Below are positions 16,379-35,706 of a stretch of 64,000 bases of DNA, in pieces. The notes under the pieces were generated by a model. The model had not been told where the DNA came from and did not search any database. It was given only the letters and a program-made list of their open reading frames with translations. Where the stretch lies: the NCBI GenBank assembly GCA_977017575.1, contig CDRNVI010000006.1:186001-250000 (forward strand). Reading direction: 5' to 3'. The stretch is from Paramoeba atlantica (Eukaryota > Protista > Discosea). Within the stretch, counting starts at the first letter, position 1; each line of letters starts with the position of its first letter. The translations under genes were made by a program, and so were the position numbers.

Positions 16379-16633
16379 GGTCGTCGGAGGTGTAGCCAAA
16401 TCCCCGTGGATGTGCGACGTGGATGAAGCATGCAACGTGTGAGTGGTTCATCCCTTATTGGATAACGAAACTGTGGTCGGTACCCATCTTTTTTTAATGG
16501 TTATTCGAACATTACATTAAAGAAGATTTGGGAATTGTTATGACTCTCAAAAAGTAAATTTTTCACTCCACTTCTCCTTTATCTTTGTCGCCCATTCTTT
16601 TCCTTAACCCCTTTCCACCCCGCTCCCCTCCCC

Positions 16634-17341
16634 ATGGCCCACCGCGTGCTGCAAAAAAACATGGCCCTGATGCAGTCCTTCCCCCCCTCCGACGGCGTCC
16701 TCTCCTGCACCTACGTCTCCGAGGCCAACCTCTTCGCCTGGGACCTCACCCTGCGCGGTCCCCCGGACTCCCCCTACCACGGCCTCACCTTCACCGCCTC
16801 CCTGGCCTTCCCCCGGGACTTCCCCATGATGCCCCCCGAGATGCGCATCACCTCCCCGTTCTGGCACCCCAACGTGTACCCCGACGGGCGGGTCTGCATG
16901 ACGATCCTGCACCCGCCCCAGGGGAACCGGGAGGACTGCCTGCGGTGGAGCCCCGTGCTCGGGGTCGACAAGATCGTGCTGAGCTTCCTGTCGCTGCTGG
17001 CCGACCCGGACCCCTCCGAGGCCGACGCCCCCGCGAACGTCGACGCGCTCCGGGAGTGGAGGCACGACAGGGGGAGGTACGTGCGGAGGGTGGAGGGGAT
17101 GGCAGGGGCGGGTAGCGTAGGGGGGGAGGGAAAGGAGGGGGAGGGGAATGTGGGGACAATGTCGCCGTCGGTGAGTTTGTTGACCACAATCTCACCGACG
17201 ACGGGTGCGGGTCCGTATGTTGGACAGGTTCGTGCGTTGCAGGAGATGGGGTTTGCGGTGTCGGTGAGTGATATGGCGCATATTTTGGATCAGGTGGGTG
17301 GGGATGTGGAAATGGCGGCGAATATTCTGGCAGGGGATTAG
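16634..17341 (+). CDS. Ubiquitin-conjugating enzyme E2 (Cdc34/Ubc7-type insertion) with C-terminal UBA-like domain
   Basis: FWHPNVYPDGRVCMTILH (catalytic Cys), an insertion before RWSP, DAPANVDA, and C-terminal QVRALQEMGF..VGGDVEMAANIL. Confidence 0.88.
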   Translation: MAHRVLQKNMALMQSFPPSDGVLSCTYVSEANLFAWDLTLRGPPDSPYHGLTFTASLAFPRDFPMMPPEMRITSPFWHPNVYPDGRVCMTILHPPQGNREDCLRWSPVLGVDKIVLSFLSLLADPDPSEADAPANVDALREWRHDRGRYVRRVEGMAGAGSVGGEGKEGEGNVGTMSPSVSLLTTISPTTGAGPYVGQVRALQEMGFAVSVSDMAHILDQVGGDVEMAANILAGD

Positions 17342-17656
17342 GGTGTCGTGAAGAGGGGGAATTTGAATTTGTGCGAGGATTTGTACCCCGATAGAAATAT
17401 TTCAACTTTCTGTAAAAATCATACTCCAAAACATGTAATTGACGAATCTCAAACGTCAATTCGACCCAATGACCAATGTCGTTGAGCGAATAACTAGCTA
17501 TTCATGAATCCCAATTTTTGCTGTTTCAATAGGGAAAGATCTTTGAGTTCTTTGTTTTCTGGGTTTGATAGATGAAATACATGATCTGTATTATTGAACT
17601 ATGAGCCTACAGCTATCAGAATATTGAACGCCCCACCCATAGCTTGTATTCACTTT

Positions 17657-18046
17657 ATGATTTTTCCCGAGGATGCAGCTCTCCGATTGTGGGGATCGGA
17701 TGCTATTATCGACAAAAGATATGCCGAGCACAACGCTAAACAATTGAACAAATTGATTGTCTTGCAGTCTGTCCTGTCTGGAGTTCTAGCTGGTGTCTTC
17801 GGTATTGAGGGCACTTACGGGTTCTGCTTCTTAGCTGTTGGACATGTGATTTCTCTCTGTACATTTTTCTGTACTTTACCAAACATAAAATACTCTAGAC
17901 CGAGGACATGCAGGTGGGACAACCTTCATCTCGCGTCTTACTTCACATCGTACGACGAATTGTTTCCATTAAATTCACTGACGGAGTCCTTATTGACATT
18001 CGTGCTTTTGTGGACGCTTTCTTACGGCATCTTCCACGTATTTTAA
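17657..18046 (+). CDS. EMC6: ER membrane protein complex subunit 6
   Basis: SVLSGVLAGVFGIEGTYGF and LLTFVLLWTLSYGIFHVF* match EMC6; first in-frame ATG is at 17657. Confidence 0.85.
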   Translation: MIFPEDAALRLWGSDAIIDKRYAEHNAKQLNKLIVLQSVLSGVLAGVFGIEGTYGFCFLAVGHVISLCTFFCTLPNIKYSRPRTCRWDNLHLASYFTSYDELFPLNSLTESLLTFVLLWTLSYGIFHVF

Positions 18047-18602
18047 GAAAAACAGAAGAGAGCGTAGCCGTTGCTCTTATGTGCTCAAACGCTTTCTCGT
18101 GTGCACAGCTCGAAGCTGCAAGCACACGGCCCAGAGATTTGCACGATATCGGATTTGTCGAGCTTGATCAATTGCAAATCTATCTGAATTCTTACCATTT
18201 CTGTCAAATTGTAAAGTCCGTACCACAATTGAGAATATAAACGGTTCTGTAATACGAAGTTTCTTACGAATTTGTACTCTGTCAAAAATGAAACGAGGTT
18301 CGGAGAAAGCTCAACTCTTTTTATGACGATTTTGATGGAAACTTATCACCGATAATGCATTTGAATATATATTTACTATCTTTAAACACCGTCTTAAGCT
18401 TTAAATACCCTCTTGAGCTTTTTCAAGGCGTTTTCAAGAGATATACCGTTAGATTTGCAAGAGTTTCTAGTATATTTTGTGAAAGGTTTATGTCTTCTTG
18501 TTTGTCGGAAAACCACCCTAGCGGACTTTGAAGTCAGATCGCGCAAAAATGACGTAGGCTAAGCGAAACAGTCCCTTGACTGCTAGCATAAAAATATTAC
18601 CC

Positions 18603-19748
18603 ATGACTTTTTCGGACGCTACGGTCTATGTGGAGCATACACTACGGTTTCAAAGTATGGCAGGATCTGTTCAAAATAATACAAATGCGGTTGCGCAACC
18701 AAACCATGTTTCTGATGCTCCGAAATATTTTCCTTACAACCAGCTTGAGTTCCAATCCGTCGTACAGTTTATTTCTTTGATCACATTCCGAGTACGCGCA
18801 GTGCTAGCCGAATTCTTTGTCATGGTACACAAAGATATTCGCGGAAAAGTCGATATCCGGAGTACATATCGCTGTGTGGGTTTGAAATTATTCCTATTGA
18901 ATGAAGATTTAGTAGTTAGTTATTCCTCACCGGAGCAATGGAGAAAAAGGAGGGTCCAGTATGACGCCTTGAAAATATCTATGGAGGATGCTATCCAAAA
19001 CATACTTTCTGAAGGAGGCAGTAGTAGTACTCCTTCCAATTTATCTAACAACACTTCAAATTCCGAAAGGTGTCCCAGTGCACTTCGCGAAATTCTTGAT
19101 GATAAGCTCCTAATTAATAAAGTAGAGTCATCGAAAAAGATGTTAAATTTCCTGCGTCGAAGAAATAACTTTGTATGTCCCCAATGGATTGGTAATATTC
19201 GCTTGCTTCTTCAACAACTCAAGAAAGAGTTGCAGGATGTGACAAAGTACATTACATTACGAATTATTAAGGTGTGGGACGAGCAGCTTCTGGTTTTTAG
19301 AGCTCCATTCGGTATTTTACCTGTCCCGAGACTACGGCTGTCCCGCCATCACTATTCGGCCCCATCGGCCGCCACATTGGGCAGAGTAAAGACATTCGCA
19401 GATGAGGTAAAGGATAATTTATCTGAGGAAAATGAATTTCGTCCATCAATTATGCATTCGCGCTTAGAACTTGATGAGGCAATAAAAGCAGACACTGTGA
19501 ACCGTGTCCACCAAGTGGCCGAACTAAATCAAATGTTGCAGTCACATGTGGAGTCCCAACATCAGAGTCTTCATGATCTCTTAGACGACAGTCACTTGCA
19601 TGAGAGCAATCTGTCGGAGACACATTTAGAGCTTAAAAAAGCACGCCTACGTCAAAGTGGAATAATGGGCACGTGGAGAAGGATGTTTTCAGTATTTCTT
19701 TTATTTTTCTCCATATTCTTCTCACTCCTTCATTCGTTGGTTAGATGA
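18603..19748 (+). CDS. Syntaxin-18/Ufe1-like Qa-SNARE
   Basis: C-terminal heptad SNARE motif (VAELNQMLQSHVESQHQSL..NLSETHLELKKA) followed by a terminal TM helix ending in a short tail. Confidence 0.6.
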   Translation: MTFSDATVYVEHTLRFQSMAGSVQNNTNAVAQPNHVSDAPKYFPYNQLEFQSVVQFISLITFRVRAVLAEFFVMVHKDIRGKVDIRSTYRCVGLKLFLLNEDLVVSYSSPEQWRKRRVQYDALKISMEDAIQNILSEGGSSSTPSNLSNNTSNSERCPSALREILDDKLLINKVESSKKMLNFLRRRNNFVCPQWIGNIRLLLQQLKKELQDVTKYITLRIIKVWDEQLLVFRAPFGILPVPRLRLSRHHYSAPSAATLGRVKTFADEVKDNLSEENEFRPSIMHSRLELDEAIKADTVNRVHQVAELNQMLQSHVESQHQSLHDLLDDSHLHESNLSETHLELKKARLRQSGIMGTWRRMFSVFLLFFSIFFSLLHSLVR

Positions 19749-20053
19749 AATTTATTGCATCGAACAAGCATACGTGGACGAGTAGGAAACCCGCAGTGCG
19801 TTGGACGTCTATTTTCAGGATGCGAAGACTAAACGTTGAAGATGAGCCATTATCTTCTGCCGTAGTCAGAATAGGAGGATCGAAAGAACGTCAAACGGAT
19901 ATTAATGAATGCTCCGCGTTAACGAAATAATTTGCACATCATGGCGACGAAATAATATTCTCGATAAATTGTGTAAAAGATACAATACTTTTGTTATTGG
20001 ACATTTCATTTTTTTATCCTATCAGCTTAGCAATATCTATTAAATCAATTTTA

Positions 20054-20365
20054 ATGACTGGCGTCACGAAAGAGCTCCTGGAAAAAAGAGCCCAAGCTGT
20101 ACGCCTTGGAGGGAAAGGTACGGTGCGCCGGAAGTCTAAAGGAGTTCACAAGACTTCAGGAGGAGACGACAAAAAGTTTCAAGGCATGCTGAAGAAACTT
20201 GGTGCCGCAGGTATCGGTGACATCGAAGAGGTGAGTTTTCACCGTGAGGATGAAAGTGTAACCACCTTTAAAAACCCTCGGGTCGACGCAAACATTCCTG
20301 GACACACGTATGTTATTCGTGGAAAGTCGGAAACCAAAAAGCCCGATTCCCAGACCCAGGAGTAG
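20054..20365 (+). CDS. BTF3: Nascent polypeptide-associated complex subunit beta
   Basis: AVRLGGKGTVRRK, DDKKFQGMLKKLG, DIEEV, FKNPRV; ATG at 20054. Confidence 0.93.
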   Translation: MTGVTKELLEKRAQAVRLGGKGTVRRKSKGVHKTSGGDDKKFQGMLKKLGAAGIGDIEEVSFHREDESVTTFKNPRVDANIPGHTYVIRGKSETKKPDSQTQE

Positions 20366-20691
20366 AGCTACCACAGCATAGTGATACTGCCAAAAGAAAG
20401 CCTATTGCTTTTATTTAATTCGCATTCAAACCTATTGTATACCCATTCCATAAAAATTAAGGTAACATAGAACTTGGTGACGTTTATGGGCTATTTTTCA
20501 GAGACTTGATGTTTCATTTTAAACATTCGTTTTCTTACGATGATTTACCTACATGTATTGCGCGAGAAGTAGCGTAAAATGACGTACCGCTTCTAAAATA
20601 TATTAAACTTTCAAGAAATTATATCACTAAGTTTCTAGTGTCCTACATTTGGTTCGGTATAAAATTTCCAAAGGTGGGCGTAAATGCATGA

Positions 20692-21399
20692 ATGATGATG
20701 CGATCGTACATCGCTCGTTGCAAGTCCGCACGAGCTCTCACAGAATTTAGACGGCCTGCTTTCGATGTTCACCATATGCCGAAATCCGGTAAAAACGGGT
20801 ACCGCTTTTCTGTAACCTATTTGGGGAAAGGATCCATACTCGTGACGTATTACCCACGCGACTCATCGGCAACAGAGTTCTCACGCCCTTCTTTTGACAT
20901 GACTCGACGTCACAGTGTGTATCTGGACATCAAGTCTGTGGCTACAATACTCGCGGTCGCGGATGGAAGACTGACTTCTGCCTCTATGCAAGCGCGCTGC
21001 GGGAATTATGTTGAGTACTACAGAAGAGACCCTACACAAAACAGAGATTTATCTAGCGGATTGGAAGAAAAGGACGATAGGGAAACAGAACACTTTACAA
21101 GCGATGCGCCTCTTTTTTATCTTCGAGTCAAGCAGTGTATTCCAGTAAATCTGCTGAAACCACCGGTGGTAGACAATCCCGACAAACAGGGAGCACACGA
21201 CAGTACTTCGAAGGGAAAAAGCGAACACAATCAAGGTCTTCAAACTGAAGAAAAGATAGAAACAATGCCAATACCAGCATGGGAACTAGCACCGTTACAA
21301 TTCGAAATTTCGTTTACCTCTCATACTTGCATTATGTGGCACCGTTTTTTGAATAGCGTAGTAAAACACTTCATGGGATTCATTGATGTCTTCGTGTAG
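20692..21399 (+). CDS. Mitochondrial guide-RNA-binding protein of the MRP1/MRP2 (gBP21/gBP25, Whirly-fold) family
   Basis: RPAFDVHH, PSFDMTRRHSVYL and IMWHRFLNSVVKHFMGF resemble remembered MRP motifs; Arg-rich presequence. Confidence 0.65.
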   Translation: MMMRSYIARCKSARALTEFRRPAFDVHHMPKSGKNGYRFSVTYLGKGSILVTYYPRDSSATEFSRPSFDMTRRHSVYLDIKSVATILAVADGRLTSASMQARCGNYVEYYRRDPTQNRDLSSGLEEKDDRETEHFTSDAPLFYLRVKQCIPVNLLKPPVVDNPDKQGAHDSTSKGKSEHNQGLQTEEKIETMPIPAWELAPLQFEISFTSHTCIMWHRFLNSVVKHFMGFIDVFV

Positions 21400-21903
21400 G
21401 CCCAGAACACGGCACTACTTTCGGCACTCAGAACGTCTTAGCGGAATCTCCTTTTTACACACGCCCCCCACATTGCAGTTTTTATTGAATTTTGTGGGGG
21501 TATTCTGCAACGAAATCAACGTTAAGATAGAAGCTCACCAGGACAACACGCATGAGCTAATGGTTCAAACTTTGTTTTCACTTGTTTGGTTGAGACCTTC
21601 GGGCATTGAGCCTTTTGAAGTCTCATAGCTTCGAACTATGAAACTAGGGAAAAGGCTCTTGTTATGACAGGTTCTTCTGATTGAACCAAATGCCAATAGC
21701 CGACGTTCATATCCCTTTGGATTGGAAAGTTCTTCAAGGACCGAGGAAACTTTTAAAATTTTAAAAAAGCGCTTTTGAAGCGCTTTCAACTTTTTTGTAC
21801 AGCTTTTGAATTTTAAAATAAATGCTTTCAATAAATGCATTTTTTAAAGAATCAATTCTCCAAAAAAAAAATTTCAGAGTTTACAGCATCGTCGTATTGA
21901 TAT

Positions 21904-22692
21904 ATGATTTCTTCACTTGATACTCCGGATTCGAGCGACGCACAGAACCAGAATGCACGACCTCCCTCTGAATTTGCAGATCTCAGTGCTCCCTACTCGT
22001 TTGGGCAAGATAGGAAGAGCGGTAACGTTGTTTGTTCAGACGCAGTACATGCGGAGCAAAACAACTTGAATACTAATGATGTCACCGATACTCAACAGAA
22101 TGAGAATAGAAATGAAAGCTTTACGAACGCTCTCGATTCCGAACAGGGTGCAACAACTGTCGGAGATGGATGCGACGGGCGTTTATCAGAAATGATTACA
22201 CCCGATTCAAATACAGTACCTACAACTGAAACTGAGCTAAACAAAGGAAAATATATTACTCCCGAAAATGCGGACGCCATGGAACGCTCAACTGTTCTAC
22301 CTGAACTCTCCGTACCACTAACAGCGGATGAGACAAAGGCACTGGCATTAGTGCCTGAAGAAGAACCGCCCATAAAAAAGAAACGAACACATAGAAAAAA
22401 ATCTAGTGGACCGATTGACGGCTTCTATCCCCACGTGTGCTTGGGCTGCGGACTGAGCAAGCGGAAATGGGCGTTCTGTGGGTGGACAGGTCGGCCCCAC
22501 CCCCCGGCACCTACTCCCTCTCAGGTGGAACGATTGCAGCACCTATGGCACCTCGTGAATGCCTCCACAGTGTCGACTTCGGCTCCCCAAGAGTCGACCT
22601 CGGCAAGTGTTGCGAGTAAAGAACAGGAATCCGAAGTGGGGGTGGAGGTAGAACCGCAGCCTTCTTCTGCGCCCACCTCCGAGGCGGTATAG
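21904..22692 (+). CDS. Hypothetical low-complexity protein with one CxxC-x9-CxxTGxxH putative zinc motif
   Basis: 262-aa ORF from ATG; HVCLGCGLSKRKWAFCGWTGRPH preceded by basic KKKRTHRKK. Confidence 0.6.
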   Translation: MISSLDTPDSSDAQNQNARPPSEFADLSAPYSFGQDRKSGNVVCSDAVHAEQNNLNTNDVTDTQQNENRNESFTNALDSEQGATTVGDGCDGRLSEMITPDSNTVPTTETELNKGKYITPENADAMERSTVLPELSVPLTADETKALALVPEEEPPIKKKRTHRKKSSGPIDGFYPHVCLGCGLSKRKWAFCGWTGRPHPPAPTPSQVERLQHLWHLVNASTVSTSAPQESTSASVASKEQESEVGVEVEPQPSSAPTSEAV

Positions 22693-23057
22693 AGATAGAG
22701 AGGCATATAGTGCTTGTAGAATGCGAAAAGTAGATCCCTATTGAAAAAAACTTCTATTGAAAAATAGATCTACAGTCAGCAAAAAAACCGTTCGAATGTT
22801 TCGGTTTTTTTTTCTTTTGTATAGAGCTATTGATTAAATATCACCGTTGCGCTGGTAATGTGTGCTAGTAGTGTAGGCATGAGTGTCACCTAATAGTACC
22901 CGTAGATAGTTCATCTCAGTTCGTTCTACCAAAGAAATAAGAATGAATATAAAAAAGTTTAGCATTCGAAAGGTTTTTTTGCTACCTATTATAGAGAAAA
23001 TCTTGTCCCAAAAAATAGATGAAACGTAATCGCCCAAGAGAGATTATGCCCCTAAAA

Positions 23058-24068
23058 TTAGTATTTAGTATTCCCCCCACGAGCCTTCAGCACTGCCTTC
23101 ATACGGGCAGGCATACTGTCCACCTGGGCACGACATACTGAGGGTGGTATGTTCGCCCATTCCATTTTTACCCTCTCCCACAACTCTCGGACCCCGCTTG
23201 GTGGATCATCGTGCGCTGCAAGGCGCCGCTTGAGTTCCCCCCAAACGTTTTCGATTGGATTTAAGTCAGGGGACTGCGGGGGCCACCGCATGACTTCAAA
23301 CCCGGTACCCCGGAGGTGCCGTTGCGCACAATGGCTTGTGTGCTTGGGGTCATTATCTTGTTGGAAGATGACCATTGGGGGGTCTAGACCCATAGTTTCG
23401 ATGGAGGGGGCAAGATTCTCTTCAAGAATCTCGACGTACTGTGTGGCGTTCAGGTTCCCTTGAACTAGACGCACATGCCCCACACCGCTTCGGGACATGC
23501 ACGCCCAAATCATGATGTGCCCCCCTCCGTACTTTACCGTGGGAATTACCCCTTTTTCACCCAGTTCCTCCCCCGGGGTCCCCCATGTCCAAAGACTTCC
23601 CCCCGTTTCAAAGCGCGAGATCTTCGTCTCGTCCGACCATACAACTGGAGCCCAGTCGTGCACTGTCCAGTGCTCATGGGCCGTGGCAAAGTCCATCCGA
23701 AGCTTGCGATGGCGCTTGGACAGGTAGGGCTTGCGGACACGCTTTCTACCTTTGTGTCCGAAGCGGTGCATCGAAACTCGGATAGACTGAGGAACAACAT
23801 CAGCAACGCCCTCGCGGCGCAGCTGAGATGATACCTCTCGCGCAGAATTTCCGGAGAACACAAGTCGTCGCACACGGCGTGTGCACGGCTCGGAAAGCTT
23901 TCGAGGGCGTCCACCCTGCATCCTGAGAGTATCAGGCCTTTCTTTTTTTAATATCATAGAAATTGTTGAGATACTTAAATTTACAGTATCAGAGATGGAC
24001 CTCATAGACACACCGCTGTCGTAGAGCTCTGCAATTTGTTTCTTTACGTAACGTGGTGTGGGCCTCAT
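23058..24068 (-). CDS. Tc1 transposase, DD34E, intact (left arm)
   Basis: WSDETK, FQQDNDPKH and SPDLNPIENVW, with 34 residues between D2 and E; N-terminal HTH; C-terminal GGNTKY. Confidence 0.95.
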   Translation of the reverse strand: MRPTPRYVKKQIAELYDSGVSMRSISDTVNLSISTISMILKKERPDTLRMQGGRPRKLSEPCTRRVRRLVFSGNSAREVSSQLRREGVADVVPQSIRVSMHRFGHKGRKRVRKPYLSKRHRKLRMDFATAHEHWTVHDWAPVVWSDETKISRFETGGSLWTWGTPGEELGEKGVIPTVKYGGGHIMIWACMSRSGVGHVRLVQGNLNATQYVEILEENLAPSIETMGLDPPMVIFQQDNDPKHTSHCAQRHLRGTGFEVMRWPPQSPDLNPIENVWGELKRRLAAHDDPPSGVRELWERVKMEWANIPPSVCRAQVDSMPARMKAVLKARGGNTKY

Positions 24069-24069
24069 A

Positions 24070-24164
24070 GAAAATAAGAATTTTAGGTAAGAAGAATTTT
24101 AGGTTATAGAGTTTATCTTACACTATTACATTGTTTATCTTACACTGTTACATTTTGCACTCTA
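24070..24164. promoter_or_regulatory. 95-bp asymmetric spacer between the two divergent transposase starts; candidate bidirectional 5' leader/trans-splice region
   Basis: Left half is purine-rich with AAGAATTTTAGGT x2 (24076, 24092); right half is pyrimidine-rich with GTTTATCTTACACT(A/G)TTACATT x2 (24111, 24133). Each strand has about 50 AG-free nt before its ATG. Confidence 0.5.
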
Positions 24165-24165
24165 T

Positions 24166-25176
24166 ATGAGGCCCACACCACGTTACGTAAAGAAACAAAT
24201 TGCAGAGCTCTACGACAGCGGTGTGTCTATGAGGTCCATCTCTGATACTGTAAATTTAAGTATCTCAACAATTTCTATGATATTAAAAAAAGAAAGGCCT
24301 GATACTCTCAGGATGCAGGGTGGACGCCCTCGAAAGCTTTCCGAGCCGTGCACACGCCGTGTGCGACGACTTGTGTTCTCCGGAAATTCTGCGCGAGAGG
24401 TATCATCTCAGCTGCGCCGCGAGGGCGTTGCTGATGTTGTTCCTCAGTCTATCCGAGTTTCGATGCACCGCTTCGGACACAAAGGTAGAAAGCGTGTCCG
24501 CAAGCCCTACCTGTCCAAGCGCCATCGCAAGCTTCGGATGGACTTTGCCACGGCCCATGAGCACTGGACAGTGCACGACTGGGCTCCAGTTGTATGGTCG
24601 GACGAGACGAAGATCTCGCGCTTTGAAACGGGGGGAAGTCTTTGGACATGGGGGACCCCGGGGGAGGAACTGGGTGAAAAAGGGGTAATTCCCACGGTAA
24701 AGTACGGAGGGGGGCACATCATGATTTGGGCGTGCATGTCCCGAAGCGGTGTGGGGCATGTGCGTCTAGTTCAAGGGAACCTGAACGCCACACAGTACGT
24801 CGAGATTCTTGAAGAGAATCTTGCCCCCTCCATCGAAACTATGGGTCTAGACCCCCCAATGGTCATCTTCCAACAAGATAATGACCCCAAGCACACAAGC
24901 CATTGTGCGCAACGGCACCTCCGGGGTACCGGGTTTGAAGTCATGCGGTGGCCCCCGCAGTCCCCTGACTTAAATCCAATCGAAAACGTTTGGGGGGAAC
25001 TCAAGCGGCGCCTTGCAGCGCACGATGATCCACCAAGCGGGGTCCGAGAGTTGTGGGAGAGGGTAAAAATGGAATGGGCGAACATACCACCCTCAGTATG
25101 TCGTGCCCAGGTGGACAGTATGCCTGCCCGTATGAAGGCAGTGCTGAAGGCTCGTGGGGGGAATACTAAATACTAA
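24166..25176 (+). CDS. Tc1 transposase, DD34E, intact (right arm; protein identical to left copy)
   Basis: Same 336-aa sequence as 23058-24068. Confidence 0.95.
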   Translation: MRPTPRYVKKQIAELYDSGVSMRSISDTVNLSISTISMILKKERPDTLRMQGGRPRKLSEPCTRRVRRLVFSGNSAREVSSQLRREGVADVVPQSIRVSMHRFGHKGRKRVRKPYLSKRHRKLRMDFATAHEHWTVHDWAPVVWSDETKISRFETGGSLWTWGTPGEELGEKGVIPTVKYGGGHIMIWACMSRSGVGHVRLVQGNLNATQYVEILEENLAPSIETMGLDPPMVIFQQDNDPKHTSHCAQRHLRGTGFEVMRWPPQSPDLNPIENVWGELKRRLAAHDDPPSGVRELWERVKMEWANIPPSVCRAQVDSMPARMKAVLKARGGNTKY

Positions 25177-25500
25177 TTTTAGGGGCATAATCTCTCTTGG
25201 GCGATTACGTTTCATCTATTTTTTGGGACAAGATTTTCTCTATAATAGGTAGCAAAAAAACCTTTCGAATGCTAAACTTTTTTATATTCATTCTTATTTC
25301 TTTGGTAGAACGAACTGAGATGAACTATCTACGGGTACTATTAGGTGACACTCATGCCTACACTACTAGCACACATTACCAGCGCAACGGTGATATTTAA
25401 TCAATAGCTCTATACAAAAGAAAAAAAAACCGAAACATTCGAACGGTTTTTTTGCTGACTGTATGTATTGGCAAAATATACACAGCGCACAGTTTATTTC

Positions 25501-25540
25501 TTTTATCACACAATCTATTTCTTCATTCTTCTCTTATCAG
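25501..25540 (+). promoter_or_regulatory. Probable trans-splice acceptor for the USP14 gene
   Basis: Pyrimidine tract TCTATTTCTTCATTCTTCTCTTATC ending in AG at 25539-25540, 8 nt before ATG 25549. Confidence 0.55.
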
Positions 25541-25548
25541 TCCTACTA

Positions 25549-26859
25549 ATGCGAATCACCGTGAAGTGGGGAAAGAAAACGTTTGATCTGGAGGCAGATC
25601 CTGAAGACACGGGTCTCATTCTTCGCGCCCAATTGCAGAGTCTGACGGGCGTGGAATCTAATAGACAAAAATTAATCGGAGCTCGGATCGAAGATGACAT
25701 CCCACTGTCGGCTACATTGGAAGGTAAACGTTCTCTGCTTTTGATAGGGTCGTGTGACCCTCTCGCATCGATGAAAAAGAATTCCGCATCAGCCACGAAG
25801 CTTGATACTGTAAAGAGTGATCCCGAAACTATTCAAGACGTGTCTCTTCGTCGGGGACTCCACAATATTGGAAACACTTGCTATCTTAACGCTTCGATTC
25901 AATTGCTGTTGTGCATTCCACAGCTATCCTCTTTATTCCCAAACAATGACGACAACCGTCGCAAGCACTTTCCATTTATGAACATGCTCGGAAATCTTCT
26001 CCAGGAGCTCACAAAAAGTGACTCCCAGGCTTGTCACCCCCTTGCCTTTTTAATAGCCTTCCACGCCGCATTTCCCCAATTTGCGGAACGGGACACTCAA
26101 GGTGCACTTTTACAACAAGACGCCCAAGAAGCGTTATCTTGTATTCTGAACCACATACGAGCATCCCTTGATAAGGAGTCACTGCAAGAGTCATTTCGTC
26201 GTTTATTTGTTATTGAGTCAAGGGAAAGTGTGAGGTGTTTAGAAGACGAGGCTACGGAACCACAGATGAGCTCTACTTCGTCTCTTATGTTGAGCTGTAC
26301 CATATCACAAGATACGGCATGCCTTGAAAATGGTCTATTACTCTCCATGAAGGAAGAAATGATTAAATATTCGGATGCTTTAAAACGAGATGCCAAATGG
26401 GAAAAACTGTCCAGAATTTCCCATTTGCCGGAATATCTCTATGTGCATATGATGCGATTTAGCTGGCGGCACGATACAACTCAGAAAGCCAAAATATTGA
26501 AAGCTGTTACTTTTCCTTTAGTACTTGATCTCTCTTCGCATTGTGTGGAAGAGTTAAAACAAGATCTAAAGCCGAAGGAAGGCAAAGTGTCCTCAAACGA
26601 GAAAGAAGGAAATAGCGCAAGCGAAGAATGTTCTTCGAACCAAAGTATTGCTACGTGCTACGAACTTTGCGGAATAGTTTCCCACAAAGGACGTACGGGA
26701 GATGGGGGACACTACGTTGCTTGGGTACGTGGTCCCGAAAACAGTTGGATTGTGGCTGACGATGAGAACAGTGCCCGTGTTAGTGAGGAGGACATAATGC
26801 GACTCCGTGGTGTAGGAGAAGCCCACATTGCATACGTCTTATTGTATCGTCGAAAGTGA
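25549..26859 (+). CDS. USP14: Proteasome-associated deubiquitinase USP14/Ubp6
   Basis: N-terminal UBL (ITVKWGKKTFDL..LQSLTGVESNRQKLI), Cys box GLHNIGNTCYLNAS, QQDAQE, His box HKGRTGDGGHY, AYVLLY. Confidence 0.93.
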   Translation: MRITVKWGKKTFDLEADPEDTGLILRAQLQSLTGVESNRQKLIGARIEDDIPLSATLEGKRSLLLIGSCDPLASMKKNSASATKLDTVKSDPETIQDVSLRRGLHNIGNTCYLNASIQLLLCIPQLSSLFPNNDDNRRKHFPFMNMLGNLLQELTKSDSQACHPLAFLIAFHAAFPQFAERDTQGALLQQDAQEALSCILNHIRASLDKESLQESFRRLFVIESRESVRCLEDEATEPQMSSTSSLMLSCTISQDTACLENGLLLSMKEEMIKYSDALKRDAKWEKLSRISHLPEYLYVHMMRFSWRHDTTQKAKILKAVTFPLVLDLSSHCVEELKQDLKPKEGKVSSNEKEGNSASEECSSNQSIATCYELCGIVSHKGRTGDGGHYVAWVRGPENSWIVADDENSARVSEEDIMRLRGVGEAHIAYVLLYRRK

Positions 26860-27142
26860 TTCGTAAAAGTTCGGTGGAAGTACATCTGTAAGTACGGTGT
26901 AGTGCATAGCACTCTATTTCACGCTAAATATTAGTCGCTTCCTCTCAAAGAAATTTATGTATACTTCTTAAATAGACTCAAAACTTTACATGTTTTAAAC
27001 GTGTTGCGCGCAATCCATTGGGTTGTAACCAACGTGTTTCATCGATAAATAATGATTATAAGTTGCTGTGCCTCAAAAAATTACAGGAAAATATATTATA
27101 AAAAAAGCGTTGACCCCCCATATTTAAATTCCCTTGTTCGTA

Positions 27143-29101
27143 ATGCCCCAGCTGTTGCGGTTGCGACGCTTCACGGCTACACTCCAAAGGTGTTCACATT
27201 ATTGCAATACAAAGTCTACTCAAGGTGCAACAGTCTTTACTTCAGGTGTGAAGTTCTTTGGGTACAGTCCACATATCGCGACCTCAAAAACATTAACTGA
27301 TGCGCGTGAGAGAGAACAAGACACTGCACGGCCAGAAACTTGTTTACCCACCAGTGATGAAAAAAATGTAAACAACACATTAATGACGAATTCGTTAAAA
27401 ACTGGTACTACGACCGGGCTTGAAAATGATGCACGCCCTACCCAAGCGCGTATAGAGTCTCCCCCTGACGTCTTGGCCGAGAAATTTCGCACTCACTGTC
27501 AAGATTTGGTAACCCTTTTGGAAAAAGCTGCATTACTCCCGAATCCATTGAAGATACGCATTATTTCACAGTATCCAGCGGAATCTCATGATTTCTCTTG
27601 GTTAGCCTCCGAAAATCATGATGTACAATTAGTGATTGTAAGTGCGCAAAACTTTGAGCAGATTGTGAAACATCTACCGCGTGACGCTGTGATTGTAAAT
27701 CTCATTGATAATGTGGAAGAGGATACGAAAACAGGTGCCATTGGGGGGAAGAGAGCTATCGCAACTTACGAGGCATATGGACACGCATACACAGGCGCAT
27801 CTCCCAGAAACTTTGCCACTCTCAAATCTCAAATTAAGAAAAATGGGGTAAATAGCCCGCGCTACGTTATTATTCGAGATCGCAGCACCCAATACTTGAG
27901 CCCGACAGAGGACGGAAAGTCACTACTGATTCAAATACAGTCACCCGATTACGATTCAGTCAACAAATCTCTGGACAGCTCTGAAAAGAAGGCGGAGAAA
28001 ATAACACAAGATTTATTACATTTTCCCCTTATTGTGAAACCGCACACTGACTTTGGCGGATCGACTCACATACGAAAGGATACGAAAGTGCACAATTTTA
28101 CGGAGTTAGAACGCGTTGCCAAAGGTTTTCCTGTTCCAGATATGATTTGCGAAGAATTTATTGATGGTCGTGAATATGCAGCCTTGGTATTCGAGGAGTT
28201 GCCCAAGTATTGTATATCACTGTCTCAGGTTCGACGAACTATAAACACTATGCTTAACTACCTTCGCAAGACATCTCAAATGTCGATAAAAAATGTCGTT
28301 TTACCTGCTACAGCAATTCAGTTCATAAAACGACGATTAAACTCGCATAGAAAAGGAGCTTCATCCGCGGTTGTGTTAGATCCCATCGAGGTTGTCCTGC
28401 CTGCCGGAGAAACATTTCAGCACGAGGATCTTAAATGGCGCATGGATAAATATGCTAATTATCAAGCAAAAAGAGGACGAAATTTTCAAGGTGCGGCGCT
28501 TACAACTGTACATGGGGGTGTTGAGGGATATTTTTCCGTGAGTATCCCATCTGACAAATGCCCTCACAGCAAGCGCGGTGAACAAAGTTCCATGGCTTCT
28601 GAAAATAATTCTAAAGAGAACTCTGCGTGCCTGAGTTATCGTATGGTACAAACGCGTCGAGAGGCAAAGTTGCGCAAAACCATGAAAACTGTTATAAGAC
28701 GAGCATGGAAATCACTGAAACACGATGGTTATTTTCGGTATGATATTCGCGTAAATCGTAGCGCTTTCGAAAATGAGAGCCCGTCAGGAGTGGAATCGCT
28801 TCGCAAACCCAAGCCTCGTCAAAATGATGTACACATCATCGATGCAAACCCCTATTGTAGTCTTTTCGGGACTTTAGATAATTTGGACGAAGCCGACACT
28901 ATACTACGTGCTTCTGGAAAAAGTATGAACCACAAACACTTTACGGGGCACTTGGTTAAGCTTGCGATACAACGAGAACTTCTGAGACGACTCAGTTTAG
29001 TGAGCAGTCTGCTCAACGTACTTAAACAAGACAAGCGCGAATATGCGACTAACAAAAGAGAACTCCTAAACTCACCACAGAAGACTGATGCTAGTTCCTG
29101 A
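27143..29101 (+). CDS. ATP-grasp enzyme, D-alanine--D-alanine ligase-like, with presequence-like N-terminus
   Basis: IVNLID..AYTGAS, FPLIVKP..GGS, ICEEFIDGREY, GYFRYDIR, IIDANP. Confidence 0.75.
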   Translation: MPQLLRLRRFTATLQRCSHYCNTKSTQGATVFTSGVKFFGYSPHIATSKTLTDAREREQDTARPETCLPTSDEKNVNNTLMTNSLKTGTTTGLENDARPTQARIESPPDVLAEKFRTHCQDLVTLLEKAALLPNPLKIRIISQYPAESHDFSWLASENHDVQLVIVSAQNFEQIVKHLPRDAVIVNLIDNVEEDTKTGAIGGKRAIATYEAYGHAYTGASPRNFATLKSQIKKNGVNSPRYVIIRDRSTQYLSPTEDGKSLLIQIQSPDYDSVNKSLDSSEKKAEKITQDLLHFPLIVKPHTDFGGSTHIRKDTKVHNFTELERVAKGFPVPDMICEEFIDGREYAALVFEELPKYCISLSQVRRTINTMLNYLRKTSQMSIKNVVLPATAIQFIKRRLNSHRKGASSAVVLDPIEVVLPAGETFQHEDLKWRMDKYANYQAKRGRNFQGAALTTVHGGVEGYFSVSIPSDKCPHSKRGEQSSMASENNSKENSACLSYRMVQTRREAKLRKTMKTVIRRAWKSLKHDGYFRYDIRVNRSAFENESPSGVESLRKPKPRQNDVHIIDANPYCSLFGTLDNLDEADTILRASGKSMNHKHFTGHLVKLAIQRELLRRLSLVSSLLNVLKQDKREYATNKRELLNSPQKTDASS

Positions 29102-29900
29102 AGCAAATTTTGTCTAGTGTTGTGGAGTGTTGCGCTGTAGACTTAATGGGTGCTTATTTTCATAGATATTTCTGCGAAGTCAGTTTACAGAAAATTCTTT
29201 TTTTATGGTTTCTTTTGTCTTCTAGATGGAGTTCCCAGTAAAGTATATTTACGTTCATCGGATAATATTTTTGAATTAATTCATGCAAGGCTTTTCAATT
29301 TGCTCCTTTGGTCGTAGACATACGAATCTCGAATTGCGAGATTACGAATTCACTTCGTTATTTTTCTAATTTTCGTTTGCACTTGAAGTCAAACGTAAAT
29401 TGAACTCCAAGTCTTCTAACTCCAATGTTTCTAAGGTACGATGTACTCTGATACTATGTATCAAATACTAAATTTTATATGACAATCAAATATTGATTAT
29501 CATATTAAAATATGATAATATTATTAGTATAATGTGGAAAAATGCGCTAATCATCTTATTAGGTATTTTTCGCTATCATTCAAGTTTAAACGGAAAGTGT
29601 TTGCGATGTATTGCCCTTTGAACGTTGCATGCTTCAGCACTTTTATTGCACTCAGAATCACTGCACAAGCAATATTGTTCGCCACCTAAACTCGTAATAA
29701 TAATATTTATAAACAGGGTTCGCGGAAACTTTAAAACTTTCAAGAAAGTACTTTAAAGTTACTTTATTTTTTTTCTAAAAACTTTCAAAAAAAATTTTTA
29801 TTCGTATACTTTAAAATTTCTTTCATCATGATTTTGATTCGTCTGTATTCATGACAGTTCATTATTAGGCCTCTATACAATACAAGATACTTTTTTTCCG

Positions 29901-30754
29901 ATGGTAAAGCTCACCTGGGGCACTTTTTGTAAAGATTTCTTTACTCAAGTACCTAATGCAGAGGGCGACAAGCAGATGGTGGAGTGCAAATTGTGTCCTG
30001 AGAATGGCAAAAAACGTTTTTTTGACGGCAAGAGGTCTGCAGACCGATTACATATCGGCAGAAAGGCATCTTCGAAAACACGATAAAAGTTATGATACGT
30101 GGTGCACGGAGCAAAGGGAGAAATATCGCCGAGAAAATCCAACGTTGCACGTAAGTTCCCAAACCGCGACGCCTGAGCACCACAAGGATGTTATAATCTG
30201 GAAATCCGAATGTGGCATTCCAACCTCGGCCCTTGAGCACCCAATATTTCGTCACAAAATTGTACGTGGAATGTGCCCCACCCCATCTCGAAGAGAAAAG
30301 CTTAACGAACTTACCATTGAGTACGCCAAGCAACTGCGTACCAAAACGTGCATTGACTTTGGATTTAAATTTTCGGATGTAAGTGTATGTATGGATACAT
30401 CCACTATTCACCACCGCACGACATGTGCCGTGACACTCGTACACAAAGGAATCTCGATGTGTTGGGCTATCAAGCCCATGTCATCAACTGACGCCACCGC
30501 ATTCAAGCGGTGGCTTCAAGGGAAAGTTTGGTCACTTATCCATAACAGCGCAAAAGCTTATTTCTTTGGTTGCATCTGAAGCAAGCTGCGAGCGGCTGTT
30601 CAGTTCTGTGGGGTTCGTGTACGAAGATCTGCGAAGTCGCATGTCACCGGAATTAGTTGCTGTAGAAACCTCGATTCGATGCAGTTTGCTTTCTCGCAAC
30701 AGTGACTGTAGGGATCCCCCAGTAGGCTTGGAAAATGAATATTAGAGGGGGGGC
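29901..30754 (+). pseudogene. hAT transposase remnant, frameshifted and internally deleted
   Basis: BED finger (VECKLC..HLRKH) split across frames at a T run near 30020; first catalytic region VSVCMDTST; then, in another frame from about 30551, the dimerisation motif LISLVASEASCERLFSS..RSRMSPE. Confidence 0.8.
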
Positions 30755-30805
30755 GGCCGGTCGGTGGTGATAGGCAGAATATGGCAGAATACGGCAGAAT
30801 ATGGC
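30753..30805. repeat. Putative hAT end (YAGAGGGGGGGC) with GGCAGAATA subterminal repeats x3
   Basis: The same head and the same repeat, inverted, recur at 62949-63000. Confidence 0.5.
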
Positions 30806-30821
30806 AAAAATCAGGTATATA

Positions 30822-30941
30822 AACCCCTCCGCATCAAAAAGGCACCCACCCTTATTTTTCGCACGAGGGGGGCTAGGGGGGTTATCGCACCACTTTATCG
30901 TGCAAAAATTTGAGATCTGTACGTTCCCGTTGTTTATTAAT
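30822..30941 (+). mobile_element. Orphan 5' end of a DD35E Tc1 family element
   Basis: Colinear with the reverse complement of 42030-42140 (CCCC..CTTATTTTT..GGGGGTTATC..GAGATCTGTACGTTCCCG); flanked by a 16-bp direct repeat. Confidence 0.75.
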
Positions 30942-31142
30942 AAAAATCAGGTATATATTAATAAAAAAAATCCGCACCGCTCCGCGGCGCCTTGGTTTAT
31001 TGCTTTTGCTAATGTTATTAAAACAGAAATCGGGGATTCATCACTGTAGACAAAGTTTAATAATAATCGTAACACTTCCAAAAAGTCAAGATTTACTTTT
31101 ACACTGATCTTACTAGCTTAGTCCTCGGGGAAATTAACAAAC

Positions 31143-31793
31143 TTAATCTTTCTGACTTTTGTCTTCCTGCACGATGCGTGGTGGTGCCCGAGGACCTATG
31201 GGTCGTCCCCTTTTCTTCGGGAACATTCCATTAATGACAATAGGGGGCTGTATCGGCACTTTTACATTGATGGGTGGAGGGGGACGGACAATTTGGAGAG
31301 GATCCTGGGTGTCATCTGCCAAGTTGGAAGAAGGGGATGGAACACTCACAGGAATAATCGACAATGTTTCGCTTTCTTGTGGCGTGTTCATCTGTGAACG
31401 GCGACTCACTCGGATGTTCTGGCCTGCGAGGTAGGCCCAAAAACGACCAGCGAATGCCTTGCATTCAGCTTCAGGATCAGACGAATTGAATTCGTCATGT
31501 GAGGCAACAACAGAACGAAGTTCCAGGCCGGCTTCGCAAATAAAGCCGTCTCGTACGTGCTCCGCACCCAGCCACCCACCACGATATGTGATGAGATTAA
31601 TGATCAATTGCACGACCCCTGTGGCAAGAAGCGGAACATCACATACCAACACATCGTCGTAGAACGCAACCGCGCTCAGACAACGATTTAAAACGCGATC
31701 AATTGCTTCCGGGTCACCTTGAAGAAGAGTGATATTTCCGCGAACAAAGCGATACTGTTTCAATGGCTTTTGTATCGCTGCCTTCCATTGCAT
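31143..31793 (-). CDS. Hypothetical protein with C-terminal AT-hook-like motif
   Basis: 216-aa ORF from ATG with globular-looking N-terminal half and KKRGRP; no homolog recognised. Confidence 0.5.
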   Translation of the reverse strand: MQWKAAIQKPLKQYRFVRGNITLLQGDPEAIDRVLNRCLSAVAFYDDVLVCDVPLLATGVVQLIINLITYRGGWLGAEHVRDGFICEAGLELRSVVASHDEFNSSDPEAECKAFAGRFWAYLAGQNIRVSRRSQMNTPQESETLSIIPVSVPSPSSNLADDTQDPLQIVRPPPPINVKVPIQPPIVINGMFPKKRGRPIGPRAPPRIVQEDKSQKD

Positions 31794-32274
31794 GATGTAC
31801 TTCTAAAAGACCAAGCTTGGTCTGAATTTCCTCTGATACGGTTTGTACAGAGACGTCAGACATATTCGTACGAAAGAAAGTGAAAAGAAGGAATGGATTC
31901 TTGGAAAATAGAGGAATAAGGCTCGTTGAAGAACAACTGGCTTTGGAAATAATATGGACTGGTCAATCTTTATTATTTAATCATAGGCTTACTATCGATC
32001 CCGTCCTGGCGACTTCGCTCGTTTTTTCGACTTTTTGGTTGAGGGGACAGGAAATTTCCTTAGCGCTTCCCGATACTGCGCTCTAATTAGCTCGCAATTT
32101 AATTATTATAAATTTATAATAATTTATAAATTTATAATTTATAAATAATTTATATTTACTTACTACATTTCGAATATTATATATTAAGGCTAAATTTAGC
32201 TATAATGCAATATCAAGAGAAATTGTTTTAAGTAGCGTAAAAAAGTTATTTTTTTAGGTTGCTTTTCGCGTGTT

Positions 32275-35664: not shown

Positions 35665-35706
35665 GAGAGATCCGAACGCCTTCTCTACATAAAGGTGGGA
35701 TGTATC

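What the first reader, a model, noticed from the sequence alone, without database searches (positions are those of the whole stretch)
22771..25463. Palindromic two-transposase Tc1 element, potentially orientation-independent in a polycistronic genome
Seen: a 2,689-bp unit whose arms (1,297 bp each) mirror each other and each encode an intact, identical 336-aa DD34E transposase, head to head. Both outer ends are the same 3'-type terminus (CAGTCAGCAAAAAAACCG), each flanked by TA; the mirror symmetry stops exactly at the TA. Known: Tc1 elements normally carry one transposase between short TIRs, and kinetoplastid genes lack individual Pol II promoters and are expressed only when sense to the host polycistron. 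Inference: this design always places one transposase sense to host transcription whichever way it lands, which could be an adaptation of a cut-and-paste element to promoterless genomes. Read-through would also make a 1.3-kb RNA hairpin, a built-in silencing trigger. Identical arms imply very recent origin or ongoing arm-to-arm conversion.
Basis: partly seen in the sequence, partly recalled or inferred. Interest (0 to 1): 0.9.

Follow-up and report, generated by a model that had tools for sequence, protein, structure and literature searches.

The report
Mirror-image twin-transposase Tc1 transposon family
A jumping gene in a free-living relative of trypanosomes is built as a perfect mirror image carrying two copies of its own transposase gene. 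It moves as one unit, and this odd design is an inherited family trait rather than an accident or an assembly error.

Summary
Window 22773-25461 is a 2,689-bp element. It has two 1,297-bp arms that are 100% complementary, a 95-nt non-palindromic spacer, and two identical intact 336-aa DD34E Tc1 transposase genes head to head, flanked by TA.

It is real and mobile.
- A second assembly of the same organism and an independent read set carry the same locus empty, with a single TA.
- I examined seven further loci. One is a second full palindrome; six are deletion derivatives, five of which still keep part of the second arm. None is an ordinary single-gene element.
- A sister family (51% protein identity) has the same architecture, with symmetry again ending 1 nt before the ATG. 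The two families form a 100/100 clade.
- None of the 80 metagenomic relative loci carries the gene inside an inverted repeat. Most show ordinary ~220-nt TIRs on either side of a single gene.
- Copy-specific substitutions are present in both arms, which shows arm-to-arm homogenisation.

It is plausible but untested. No RNA data were usable, and ordinary Tc1 families live in the same genome.

First-stage notes of this scan report similar palindromic Tc1 elements on other pieces of this genome; I did not check them.

Verdict: a new structural variant of Tc1/mariner.

The parts
22771..22772 (.). Left TA target-site duplication
   Evidence: The empty allele has a single TA here.
22773..22990 (+). 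Left terminal module (~215 nt). It corresponds to the usual TIR of this Tc1 subgroup. Terminus is CAGTCAGC. The outer 33-nt motif at 22778-22810 is repeated, inverted, at 22951-22983.
   Evidence: I2. Several metagenomic relatives have ~220-nt TIRs with the same outer/inner inverted motif layout.
23058..24068 (-). Transposase gene, left arm, 336 aa, intact
24070..24164 (.). 95-nt non-palindromic spacer. GC 0.25. Purine-rich left half (Y 0.36) and pyrimidine-rich right half (Y 0.69), so each ATG is preceded on its own strand by a pyrimidine-rich, AG-free leader of about 50 nt. Contains short tandem repeats (D3, D6).
   Evidence: Junctions to both arms are seen in contigs of independent runs (records 10, 11, 19).
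24166..25176 (+). Transposase gene, right arm, 336 aa, intact. DD34E (D146, D238, E273). Sense to the host gene cluster.
25244..25461 (-). Right terminal module, mirror of the left one (33-nt motifs at 25251-25283 and 25424-25456)
   Evidence: I3
25462..25463 (.). Right TA target-site duplication
22773..25461 (.). Whole mobile unit, 2,689 bp. It lies in the 154-nt intergenic region between a 262-aa gene and a USP14-like ubiquitin hydrolase gene.

Best explanation
This is an autonomous, recently mobile Tc1-family (DD34E) cut-and-paste DNA transposon of a non-trypanosomatid kinetoplastid, and its terminal inverted repeats have grown to include the whole transposase gene. Each half consists of a ~215-nt terminal module, a 3' UTR and a complete transposase gene. 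The two halves face each other across a short, AT-rich, non-palindromic spacer that begins 1 nt before each ATG.

Shown here:
- The unit inserts as one piece at TA and duplicates the TA.
- The mirror design is the ancestral, heritable form of at least two families that share about 51% protein identity.
- The arms of a copy evolve in concert.
- Copies decay by losing part or all of one arm, in the manner of abortive gap repair.

Inferred:
- The transposase binds the ~30-nt motifs in the two outer terminal modules and cuts at the CAGT ends, as in ordinary Tc1 elements. There are no inner ends, so only the whole palindrome can move.
- The arms are kept alike by intramolecular gene conversion or repair of a snap-back heteroduplex.
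- Expression comes from read-through of the host's one-directional gene cluster, which finds one gene in sense whichever way the element lands.
For: Structure and protein.

One-step insertion with a TA duplication:
- An 18-kb contig of run X1 joins 22770 to 25462, skipping 2,691 nt with 2 ambiguous letters.
- ENA contig ctg4002l (L006) reads ...TAGATC-TA-TGTATTGG..., with flanks 97.3% and 99.8% identical to the window.

Family trait:
- L001 is a second full palindrome at another TA. Its arms differ at 3 positions and it has the same 95-nt spacer.
- L002, L004, L005, L008 and L009 keep one full or nearly full arm (L005 also lacks the centre and the first ~155 nt of that arm) plus a remnant of the other. 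L010 keeps one full arm, part of the spacer, the 8-nt terminus of the lost arm and a 12-nt filler that matches mid-arm sequence.
- In L009 and L010 both termini are retained next to TA.
- 0 of 8 loci is an ordinary 5'TIR-gene-3'TIR element.

Sister family:
- L007 has 48-nt central arms, a 55-nt spacer, outer arms 99% alike and TA flanks.
- Two 338/339-identical ORFs of that family lie on one 200-kb contig.
- Families A and B form a clade with 100/100 support, apart from 42 metagenomic relatives and two other Tc1 families of this genome.
- None of the 80 metagenomic loci has the gene inside an inverted repeat. Most show ordinary TIRs of up to ~240 nt on either side of a single gene.

Concerted evolution: one window-specific and two L001-specific substitutions are present on both arms.

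Host context: 28 of 32 ORFs of 200 aa or more lie on the + strand. The best named homologues of the neighbouring USP14-like gene are trypanosomatids and Neobodo, at 34-39% identity.
Against: - The filled junctions of this particular copy were not seen in any listed read contig. Only the empty allele and other insertion sites were seen.
- No long read was examined.
- No transcript evidence exists. The one RNA-labelled run holds none of the element.
- The case for conversion rests on only 3 symmetric changes in the intact copies (1 in the window copy, 2 in L001), plus 2-3 in the decayed copy L002.
- Family B is documented by one sequenced deletion derivative plus an indirect pair of ORFs that I could not fetch.
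- Binding of transposase to the terminal motifs is assumed from homology and was not tested.
Confidence: 0.85

Rival explanations
1. Adaptive reading. The mirror design is selected because kinetoplastid genes have no promoters of their own. Whichever way the element inserts in a polycistronic unit, one transposase gene is sense and can be trans-spliced. The pyrimidine-rich leaders on both strands of the spacer serve this purpose.
For: - The host gene cluster runs in one direction and is kinetoplastid.
- The architecture has been kept across two families that are 51% identical, although single-gene revertants with both terminal modules arise readily (L002, L007).
- Both genes are intact in both full copies.
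- In both families the spacer is purine-rich then pyrimidine-rich, so each ATG has a Y-rich, AG-free leader. That lies within the range seen for host genes in the window.
- 4 of 5 one-arm derivatives with a clear host context keep the gene that is sense to the neighbouring genes. With n=5 this is not significant.
Against: - Ordinary single-gene Tc1 families (373 aa with ~111-nt TIRs; 339 aa) and other class II elements persist in the same genome.
- Read-through would also make a 1.3-kb perfect hairpin RNA.
- There is no RNA evidence at all.
- The first AG after the pyrimidine leader lies inside the ORF (ATGAG), so the use of these signals is unclear.
Confidence: 0.3
2. Neutral by-product. A single fold-back (inverted-duplication) repair event at the 5' end of an ordinary Tc1 element created a long-TIR derivative. 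It remained mobile because it has two good outer ends. The design persists by inheritance and arm homogenisation, not because it helps expression.
For: - The relatives are ordinary elements with ~220-nt TIRs.
- The palindrome equals TIR module plus gene, mirrored, with no inner ends.
- The clade structure points to a single origin.
- Tc1 transposases need only the terminal modules (established knowledge of Tc1/mariner).
Against: - Over the long A/B divergence (branches of 0.6-0.7 changes per site), single-gene revertants should have replaced a costly, recombinogenic palindrome if it gave no advantage.
- The symmetry boundary sits at ATG-1 and the spacer composition is strand-symmetric in both families. 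This looks constrained.
Confidence: 0.3
3. Self-repair or redundancy reading. Two gene copies that convert each other act as an internal backup, as in the palindromes of the human Y chromosome, and lengthen the life of autonomous copies.
For: - Symmetric lineage-specific substitutions show arm-to-arm transfer.
- Intact copies have 0-3 arm differences. The decayed copy L002, where homology is interrupted by a deletion, has about 12 arm-specific differences in about 490 nt.
Against: - Conversion can spread a disabling mutation as easily as remove it.
- There are too few copies for any test of direction.
Confidence: 0.15
4. Portable divergent start region. The AT-rich spacer between two outward-facing genes works like a miniature divergent strand-switch region and starts transcription in both directions, so the element does not depend on the host unit.
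For: - The genes are head to head, as at kinetoplastid divergent strand-switch regions (general knowledge; also discussed in PMC8101967).
- The spacer has GC 0.25, between ORFs of about 56% GC.
- Outward transcripts would not form a hairpin.
Against: - 95 nt (55 nt in family B) is far smaller than known start regions.
- No promoter motif was identified and there are no RNA data.
Confidence: 0.1
5. Artefact or chance juxtaposition. Either an assembly or amplification fold-back chimera, or two separate elements that landed head to head.
For: Perfect arm identity is what a fold-back chimera would give. No spanning long read was inspected.
Against: - The insertion is exact, TA-flanked, and matched by an empty allele.
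- The same structure, with the same spacer, is at another locus in another assembly.
- Derivatives exist whose arms have diverged (L002, 97%).
- Spacer-arm junctions appear in contigs of runs from different samples.
- The inner ends have no terminus or TIR module.
- A sister family has the same design.
Confidence: 0.02

Closest known systems
Ordinary Tc1-family DD34E elements with long (~200-460 bp) TIRs carrying two transposase-binding motifs per end (Sleeping Beauty and other IR/DR elements, Tc3, Minos, Bari3)
   Same: - DD34E catalytic domain, alignable to SB100X at E 1e-56.
- Paired-like HTH N-terminus.
- TA target duplication and CAGT-type termini.
- A ~215-nt terminal module with the ~30-nt motif present twice.
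- Internal-deletion derivatives.
   Different: - The gene is inside the inverted repeat and therefore present twice, head to head, and there is no distinct 5' end.
- The two motifs in each terminal module are inverted relative to each other. In IR/DR elements they are direct; that point is from memory.
Bacterial composite transposons made of two inverted IS copies (Tn5, Tn10; the IS630-based Tn630-NC1 of PMC11544213)
   Same: Two inverted transposase-bearing modules move as one unit using their outer ends. In Tn630-NC1 the two genes are also transcribed outward from the centre.
   Different: Each IS module there is complete, with its own inner end, can move alone, and the pair flanks cargo genes. 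Here the inner ends are absent, there is no cargo, and only a 55-95-nt spacer lies between the genes.
Foldback-type elements with very long TIRs (Drosophila FB, Galileo of the P superfamily; PMC3573991, PMC3688188) and palindromic non-autonomous Tc1/mariner derivatives (hairpin-like MITEs)
   Same: Kilobase-scale inverted arms that make up most of the element. The arms evolve in concert.
   Different: Their arms are non-coding repeats. The transposase gene, if present, is single and central, and MITEs encode nothing.
Arm-to-arm gene conversion in large genomic palindromes (human Y-chromosome palindromes; from memory)
   Same: Near-identical arms are maintained by intrachromosomal conversion, and duplicated genes lie inside the arms.
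   Different: Those palindromes are not mobile elements, and the scale is tens of kb to Mb.
DNA transposons reported so far in kinetoplastids (Merlin in Bodo saltans and Perkinsela, PMC8101967)
   Same: A class II element in a non-trypanosomatid kinetoplastid. The question of orientation relative to polycistronic units was raised there too.
   Different: That is a different superfamily, judged inactive or uncertain there. The element here is a Tc1 with a polymorphic insertion and a mirror architecture.

Membership tests
Tc1/mariner superfamily, Tc1 (DD34E) family | DDE_3 catalytic domain with the D, D(34)E triad | tested here: met
   Pfam DDE_3 at E 1.7e-15. D146, D238 and E273, with 34 residues between the last two. 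These match the Sleeping Beauty catalytic domain.
Tc1/mariner superfamily, Tc1 (DD34E) family | N-terminal paired-like helix-turn-helix DNA-binding region | tested here: met
   HTH_Tnp_Tc3_2 is above its cut-off. There are weaker matches to HTH_SB, HTH_38 and HTH_7 at residues 9-42.
Tc1/mariner superfamily, Tc1 (DD34E) family | Insertion at TA with TA duplication | tested here: met
   The empty site has one TA and the filled site has two. TA flanks are also seen at L001, L002, L005, L007, L009 and L010.
Tc1/mariner superfamily, Tc1 (DD34E) family | Terminal inverted repeats ending in CAGT-type termini | tested here: met
   CAGTCAGC... is at both ends. The whole 1,297-nt arm is an inverted repeat.
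Tc1/mariner superfamily, Tc1 (DD34E) family | One transposase gene between the two TIRs (canonical layout) | tested here: not met
   There are two genes, each inside a TIR. This makes it a structural variant. It does not affect superfamily membership, which rests on the transposase and the TSD.
Tc1/mariner superfamily, Tc1 (DD34E) family | Cut-and-paste activity of the encoded transposase on its own ends | not testable with these tools
   There is only indirect evidence: insertion polymorphism, deletion derivatives, and footprint-like end fragments.
Composite transposon (two complete IS or transposon copies flanking a segment) | Each module has both of its own ends, so inner ends are present | tested here: not met
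   No terminus or TIR module lies next to the spacer. The arms end at ATG-1.
Composite transposon (two complete IS or transposon copies flanking a segment) | Cargo between the modules | tested here: not met
   Only a 95-nt spacer with no ORF lies between them.
Foldback elements | Long arms made of non-coding tandem subrepeats | tested here: not met
   The arms are a unique coding sequence plus a UTR. The only tandem repeats are the short ones in the spacer.

The most novel reading that the evidence does not exclude
The mirror twin-gene layout is an evolved solution that lets a cut-and-paste transposon live in a promoterless, polycistronic genome. One gene is always sense to host transcription, the strand-symmetric pyrimidine leaders in the spacer provide processing signals in both directions, and arm-to-arm conversion keeps both genes functional. 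This would be a transposon architecture shaped by the host's mode of transcription, kept since before two families diverged to 51% identity.
Probability: 0.3. Interest if true: 0.85.

Novelty: new variant of a known kind. Interest (0 to 1): 0.7.

Why it matters
Tc1/mariner elements are among the best-studied transposons, and their layout is normally one gene between two short or medium TIRs. I did not find a natural, autonomous lineage with the whole gene inside the TIR in the literature I could search. Here that design has been inherited across deeply diverged families and kept symmetric by conversion.

This matters for three reasons.
- It sits in a kinetoplastid. In the library searched, the only report of DNA transposons in this group is a 2021 paper on Merlin (PMC8101967).
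- The insertion polymorphism suggests recent activity, so experiments are possible.
- It offers a clean natural test of how a transposon copes with promoterless polycistronic transcription and with self-made hairpin RNA. It is also a small model for palindrome maintenance by gene conversion.

Tried and rejected
- **Assembly or MDA fold-back chimera:** rejected on the evidence.
- **Two independent head-to-head insertions, or a composite of two complete elements:** rejected. There are no inner termini and the empty site shows a one-step insertion.
- **A third palindrome at L001:10775-11228:** this is a nest of unrelated Tc1 fragments, not a twin-gene element.
- **The 339-aa Tc1-like gene at window 40953-41972:** it is only 25% identical, has no long inverted repeat, and is not the sister family.
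- **Exact-protein look-ups of the window's transposase and its neighbour gene:** both found nothing. The window's own allele is not in that collection.
- **Rfam scan of the window:** nothing at gathering score.
- **RNA evidence:** the only RNA-labelled run of the species holds none of the element, so expression, spliced-leader sites and small RNAs could not be examined.
- **Literature searches:** searches for a palindromic or twin-transposase Tc1 and for Tc1 in kinetoplastids found no description of this design. Absence from this library does not prove it is undescribed.
Full report
**1. The observation**

- The repeat finder reports one inverted repeat with arms 22771-24069 and 24165-25463. 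They are 1299 nt, 100% complementary, and 95 nt apart.
- The two outermost bases of each arm are TA. The element proper is therefore 22773-25461, or 2,689 bp, with 1,297-bp arms.
- Each arm holds an ORF of 336 aa, at 23058-24068 on the minus strand and 24166-25176 on the plus strand. The translations are identical.
- The 26-nt terminus occurs twice in the window and nowhere else, against zero expected from shuffles.
- The protein has Pfam DDE_3 and HTH_Tnp_Tc3_2. Residues 107-336 align to the catalytic domain of Sleeping Beauty SB100X at E 1.3e-56. The triad is D146, D238, E273, that is DD34E.
- The ORFs are about 56% GC in a host background of about 42%.

**2. The host**

28 of the 32 ORFs of 200 aa or more in the window lie on the plus strand. 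The gene just downstream of the element is a USP14-like ubiquitin hydrolase. Its best named homologues are trypanosomatids and Neobodo, at 34-39% identity. The host is therefore a kinetoplastid outside the trypanosomatids, with the one-directional gene clusters expected of that group. The element sits in the short intergenic region between two plus-strand genes.

**3. It is a real insertion that moved as one piece**

A public assembly of the same organism (ENA ERZ24900291, contig ctg4002l, locus L006) carries the same two neighbouring genes only 154 nt apart.
- The left flank aligns to the window at 97.3% identity and the right flank at 99.8%.
- The join reads ...TAGATC-TA-TGTATTGG..., with a single TA where the window has TA, 2,689 bp, TA.
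- Independently, an 18,140-nt Logan contig of run X1 lies on 21800-22770 and continues at 25462. It skips 2,691 nt with two ambiguous letters, and it carries the same flank variants as the ENA allele.

This is the classical signature of a Tc1/mariner insertion polymorphism. The allele without the element shows no footprint.

Contigs of runs from other samples cover the joins between the spacer and both arms: X2 records 10 and 11, and X4 record 19. Word depth over the element is roughly 10-40 times that of the flanks, so the element is multi-copy.

The filled junctions of this particular copy were not among the contigs listed, and no long read was available. That check remains open.

**4. The palindrome is the family's normal form**

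The 97%-identical protein cluster has 13 members on about ten contigs of the ENA assembly. I fetched seven of those loci and laid the window's spacer plus arm on them.

| Locus | What is there |
|---|---|
| L001 (= L003) | Second full palindrome at another TA, with the same 95-nt spacer. The arms differ at 3 positions. |
| L002 | One full arm, the spacer, and a second arm with an 806-nt internal deletion. Both terminal modules are kept. |
| L004 | One full arm, the spacer, and only the innermost 16 nt of the second arm. |
| L005 | The centre is deleted, including the spacer and the first ~155 nt of the retained arm. 39 nt of the second arm remain. |
| L008 | One full arm, the spacer, and the inner 283 nt of the other arm. 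|
| L009 | One full arm, the spacer, and the inner 45 nt of the other arm, joined directly to its terminal TA-CAGTCAGCAAAAG. |
| L010 | One full arm and the spacer from nt 31, then a 12-nt filler that matches mid-arm sequence, then the terminal TA-CAGTCAGG. |

Counting the window copy, 2 of 8 loci are complete palindromes. Five keep a remnant of the second arm, and L010 keeps only its terminus. None is an ordinary 5'TIR-gene-3'TIR element.

The derivatives look like products of interrupted gap repair after excision, which is how Tc1, mariner and P elements are known to generate internally deleted copies. That comparison is an inference from established knowledge. The diverged arms of L002 (97% over 348 nt) cannot be produced by an assembler.

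**5. A sister family has the same design**

The next-closest protein in the databases, P0002, is 51% identical over its full length and comes from the same assembly. Its locus L007 shows:
- central arms of 48 nt around a 55-nt spacer;
- outer arms 99% alike, at 2538-3082 against 3950-4487;
- a 717-nt deletion in one arm;
- TA on both sides, next to CAGTAACTAAC-type termini;
- the same sub-terminal inverted motif.

In both families the symmetry stops exactly 1 nt before the ATG. In both, the spacer is AT-rich (GC 0.25 and 0.27), purine-rich in its left half and pyrimidine-rich in its right half. Each gene therefore has a pyrimidine-rich, AG-free leader on its own strand.

Two further family-B ORFs that are 338/339 identical lie on one 200-kb contig. 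That is what a full family-B palindrome would give.

**6. The relatives elsewhere are ordinary**

A scan of metagenome contigs with a profile of the family returned 80 loci at 34-52% identity.
- Self-comparison found no locus with the gene inside an inverted repeat. Most loci show a single gene flanked by TIRs of up to ~240 nt, about 215-240 nt where both ends are complete.
- In several of them the outer ~30 nt of the TIR is repeated, inverted, at the inner edge of the TIR.
- That is the same layout as the 33-nt motifs 140 nt apart in the window's terminal modules (I2 and I3). The window's terminal ~215 nt therefore corresponds to the subgroup's usual TIR.

The palindrome can be described as TIR, gene (reverse), spacer, gene, TIR.

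In a maximum-likelihood tree of 46 proteins, families A and B form a clade with 100/100 support on a long stem. They are apart from 42 metagenomic relatives and from two other Tc1 families of the same genome. The simplest reading is a single origin of the mirror layout before A and B diverged. L067 and L079 (52% in their best segment) were left out of the tree because their ORFs are broken.

The same genome also holds ordinary Tc1 elements:
- a 373-aa family with ~111-nt TIRs at L001:8088-9657;
- a 339-aa family in the window at 40953-41972, with no long inverted repeat.

**7. The arms evolve in concert**

I aligned all arms.
- The window copy has one substitution that no other copy has, and it is on both arms (column 1156).
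- L001 has two such symmetric substitutions (columns 118 and 127) and three arm-specific ones.
- L002, whose arm homology is interrupted by the deletion, has two or three symmetric and about twelve arm-specific differences in about 490 nt.

A new mutation arises on one arm. To be on both, it must have been copied across. The identical arms are therefore better explained by ongoing homogenisation than by youth alone, and section 6 shows that the design itself is old. The mechanism is inferred: either gene conversion between arms or repair of a snap-back heteroduplex. The counts are small.

**8. How it most likely works**

*Shown:* the unit transposes as a whole into TA. It has only two termini, both of the 3' type. 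It encodes an apparently intact DD34E transposase twice.

*Inferred from homology:* the transposase recognises the ~30-nt motifs in the outer ~215-nt modules and performs ordinary cut-and-paste.

- It fits the host's gene organisation, the conservation of the layout, and the strand-symmetric pyrimidine leaders.
- Four of five one-arm derivatives with a clear context keep the gene that is sense to the neighbours. With n=5 this is not significant.
- Against it, ordinary Tc1 families coexist in the genome, read-through would fold into a 1.3-kb hairpin, the first AG after the leader lies inside the ORF, and no RNA run holds the element.

The alternatives are a neutral fold-back duplication kept by inheritance, a conversion-based backup of the gene, and a miniature divergent start region. 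I rate the adaptive reading at about 0.3.

**9. Comparison with what is known**

By transposase, TSD and termini this is a member of the Tc1 (DD34E) family of the Tc1/mariner superfamily. It fails only the canonical one-gene layout.
- It is not a composite transposon in the Tn5, Tn10 or Tn630 sense (PMC11544213), because the inner ends and the cargo are missing.
- It is not a Foldback or Galileo-type element (PMC3573991), because the arms are coding and unique.

Full-text searches found no description of a natural Tc1 with the gene inside the TIRs. They also found that the first DNA transposons in kinetoplastids were reported only in 2021, and those were Merlin, not Tc1 (PMC8101967). Subscription literature was not searchable, so prior description cannot be excluded.

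First-stage notes of this scan list three more palindromic twin-transposase Tc1 elements on other pieces of the same genome, of 2,663, 2,528 and 2,245 letters. I could not read those pieces. The 2,663-letter one has the length expected of a full family-B element.

**10. Verdict**

The mirror twin-gene Tc1 is a real, recently mobile family architecture with concerted arm evolution, shared by at least two deeply diverged families in a kinetoplastid. The adaptive interpretation is attractive and now directly testable, but it is unproven. I class the finding as a new variant of a known kind, with interest 0.7.

Noticed in passing
window 14859-22738 versus 25462-34000 (against L006): The two alleles are 97.3% identical to the left of the insertion site (159 mismatches and 14 gaps in 7.9 kb) but 99.77% identical to the right (20 mismatches in 8.5 kb). 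Heterozygosity or divergence switches right at the element. This could be a recombination or loss-of-heterozygosity boundary.
   Followed up: no
L004:6283-6318 and L008:5316-5345: Just outside the right terminus of two copies there is a short filler followed by a second 10-15-nt copy of the terminal sequence and another TA (for example ...GCTGACTG-TA-TATACATTGCTGACTG-TA). These look like footprints or extreme deletion derivatives left by excision and repair.
   Followed up: partly
L002, L004, L005, L009 versus L010: In one-arm derivatives, the retained transposase gene is sense to the flanking host genes in 4 loci and antisense in 1. L008 is unclear. This is suggestive for the orientation hypothesis, but n=5 is not significant.
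   Followed up: partly
L001:8088-9657: An ordinary single-gene Tc1 element (373 aa, ~111-nt TIRs beginning TACAGGGGTG, in a TA-rich site) lies 0.8 kb from the second palindrome. It sits beside a reverse-transcriptase gene and fragments of the window's 339-aa Tc1 family, in a transposon-rich nest.
   Followed up: partly
L011-L090 (for example L016:125-345/1517-1726, L040, L070, L090): Metagenomic (mostly soil) relatives have ~220-nt TIRs. In several of them the outer ~30 nt recur, inverted, at the TIR's inner edge. Each TIR is thus a small hairpin-like module, unlike the direct repeats of IR/DR elements. Many of these contigs end at the TIRs, as expected for multi-copy elements.
   Followed up: partly
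window 22805-22828 and its mirror 25406-25429: Reading inward from each terminus there is a T-rich tract (T9CT4) followed by AGAG about 50 nt inside the element. In a kinetoplastid this could act as a trans-splicing and polyadenylation signal for the host gene upstream of an insertion.
   Followed up: no
L001:5899 (column 6 of the arm alignment): One arm of the second full copy has G to C in codon 2 (Arg to Thr). This also removes the AG at +4/+5, which is the first AG after the pyrimidine leader.
   Followed up: no
L007:4871-5494; window 29901-42140: Other class II elements are near these copies. A hAT dimerisation-domain gene lies beside the family-B copy, and several transposase lineages are noted in the window. 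This kinetoplastid genome appears unusually rich in DNA transposons.
   Followed up: no
other pieces of the same genome (scan notes): Scan notes filed under the same genome include bacterial features, such as an ERIC-like element in a DsbA signal peptide. The assembly evidently contains co-cultured bacterial contigs.
   Followed up: no
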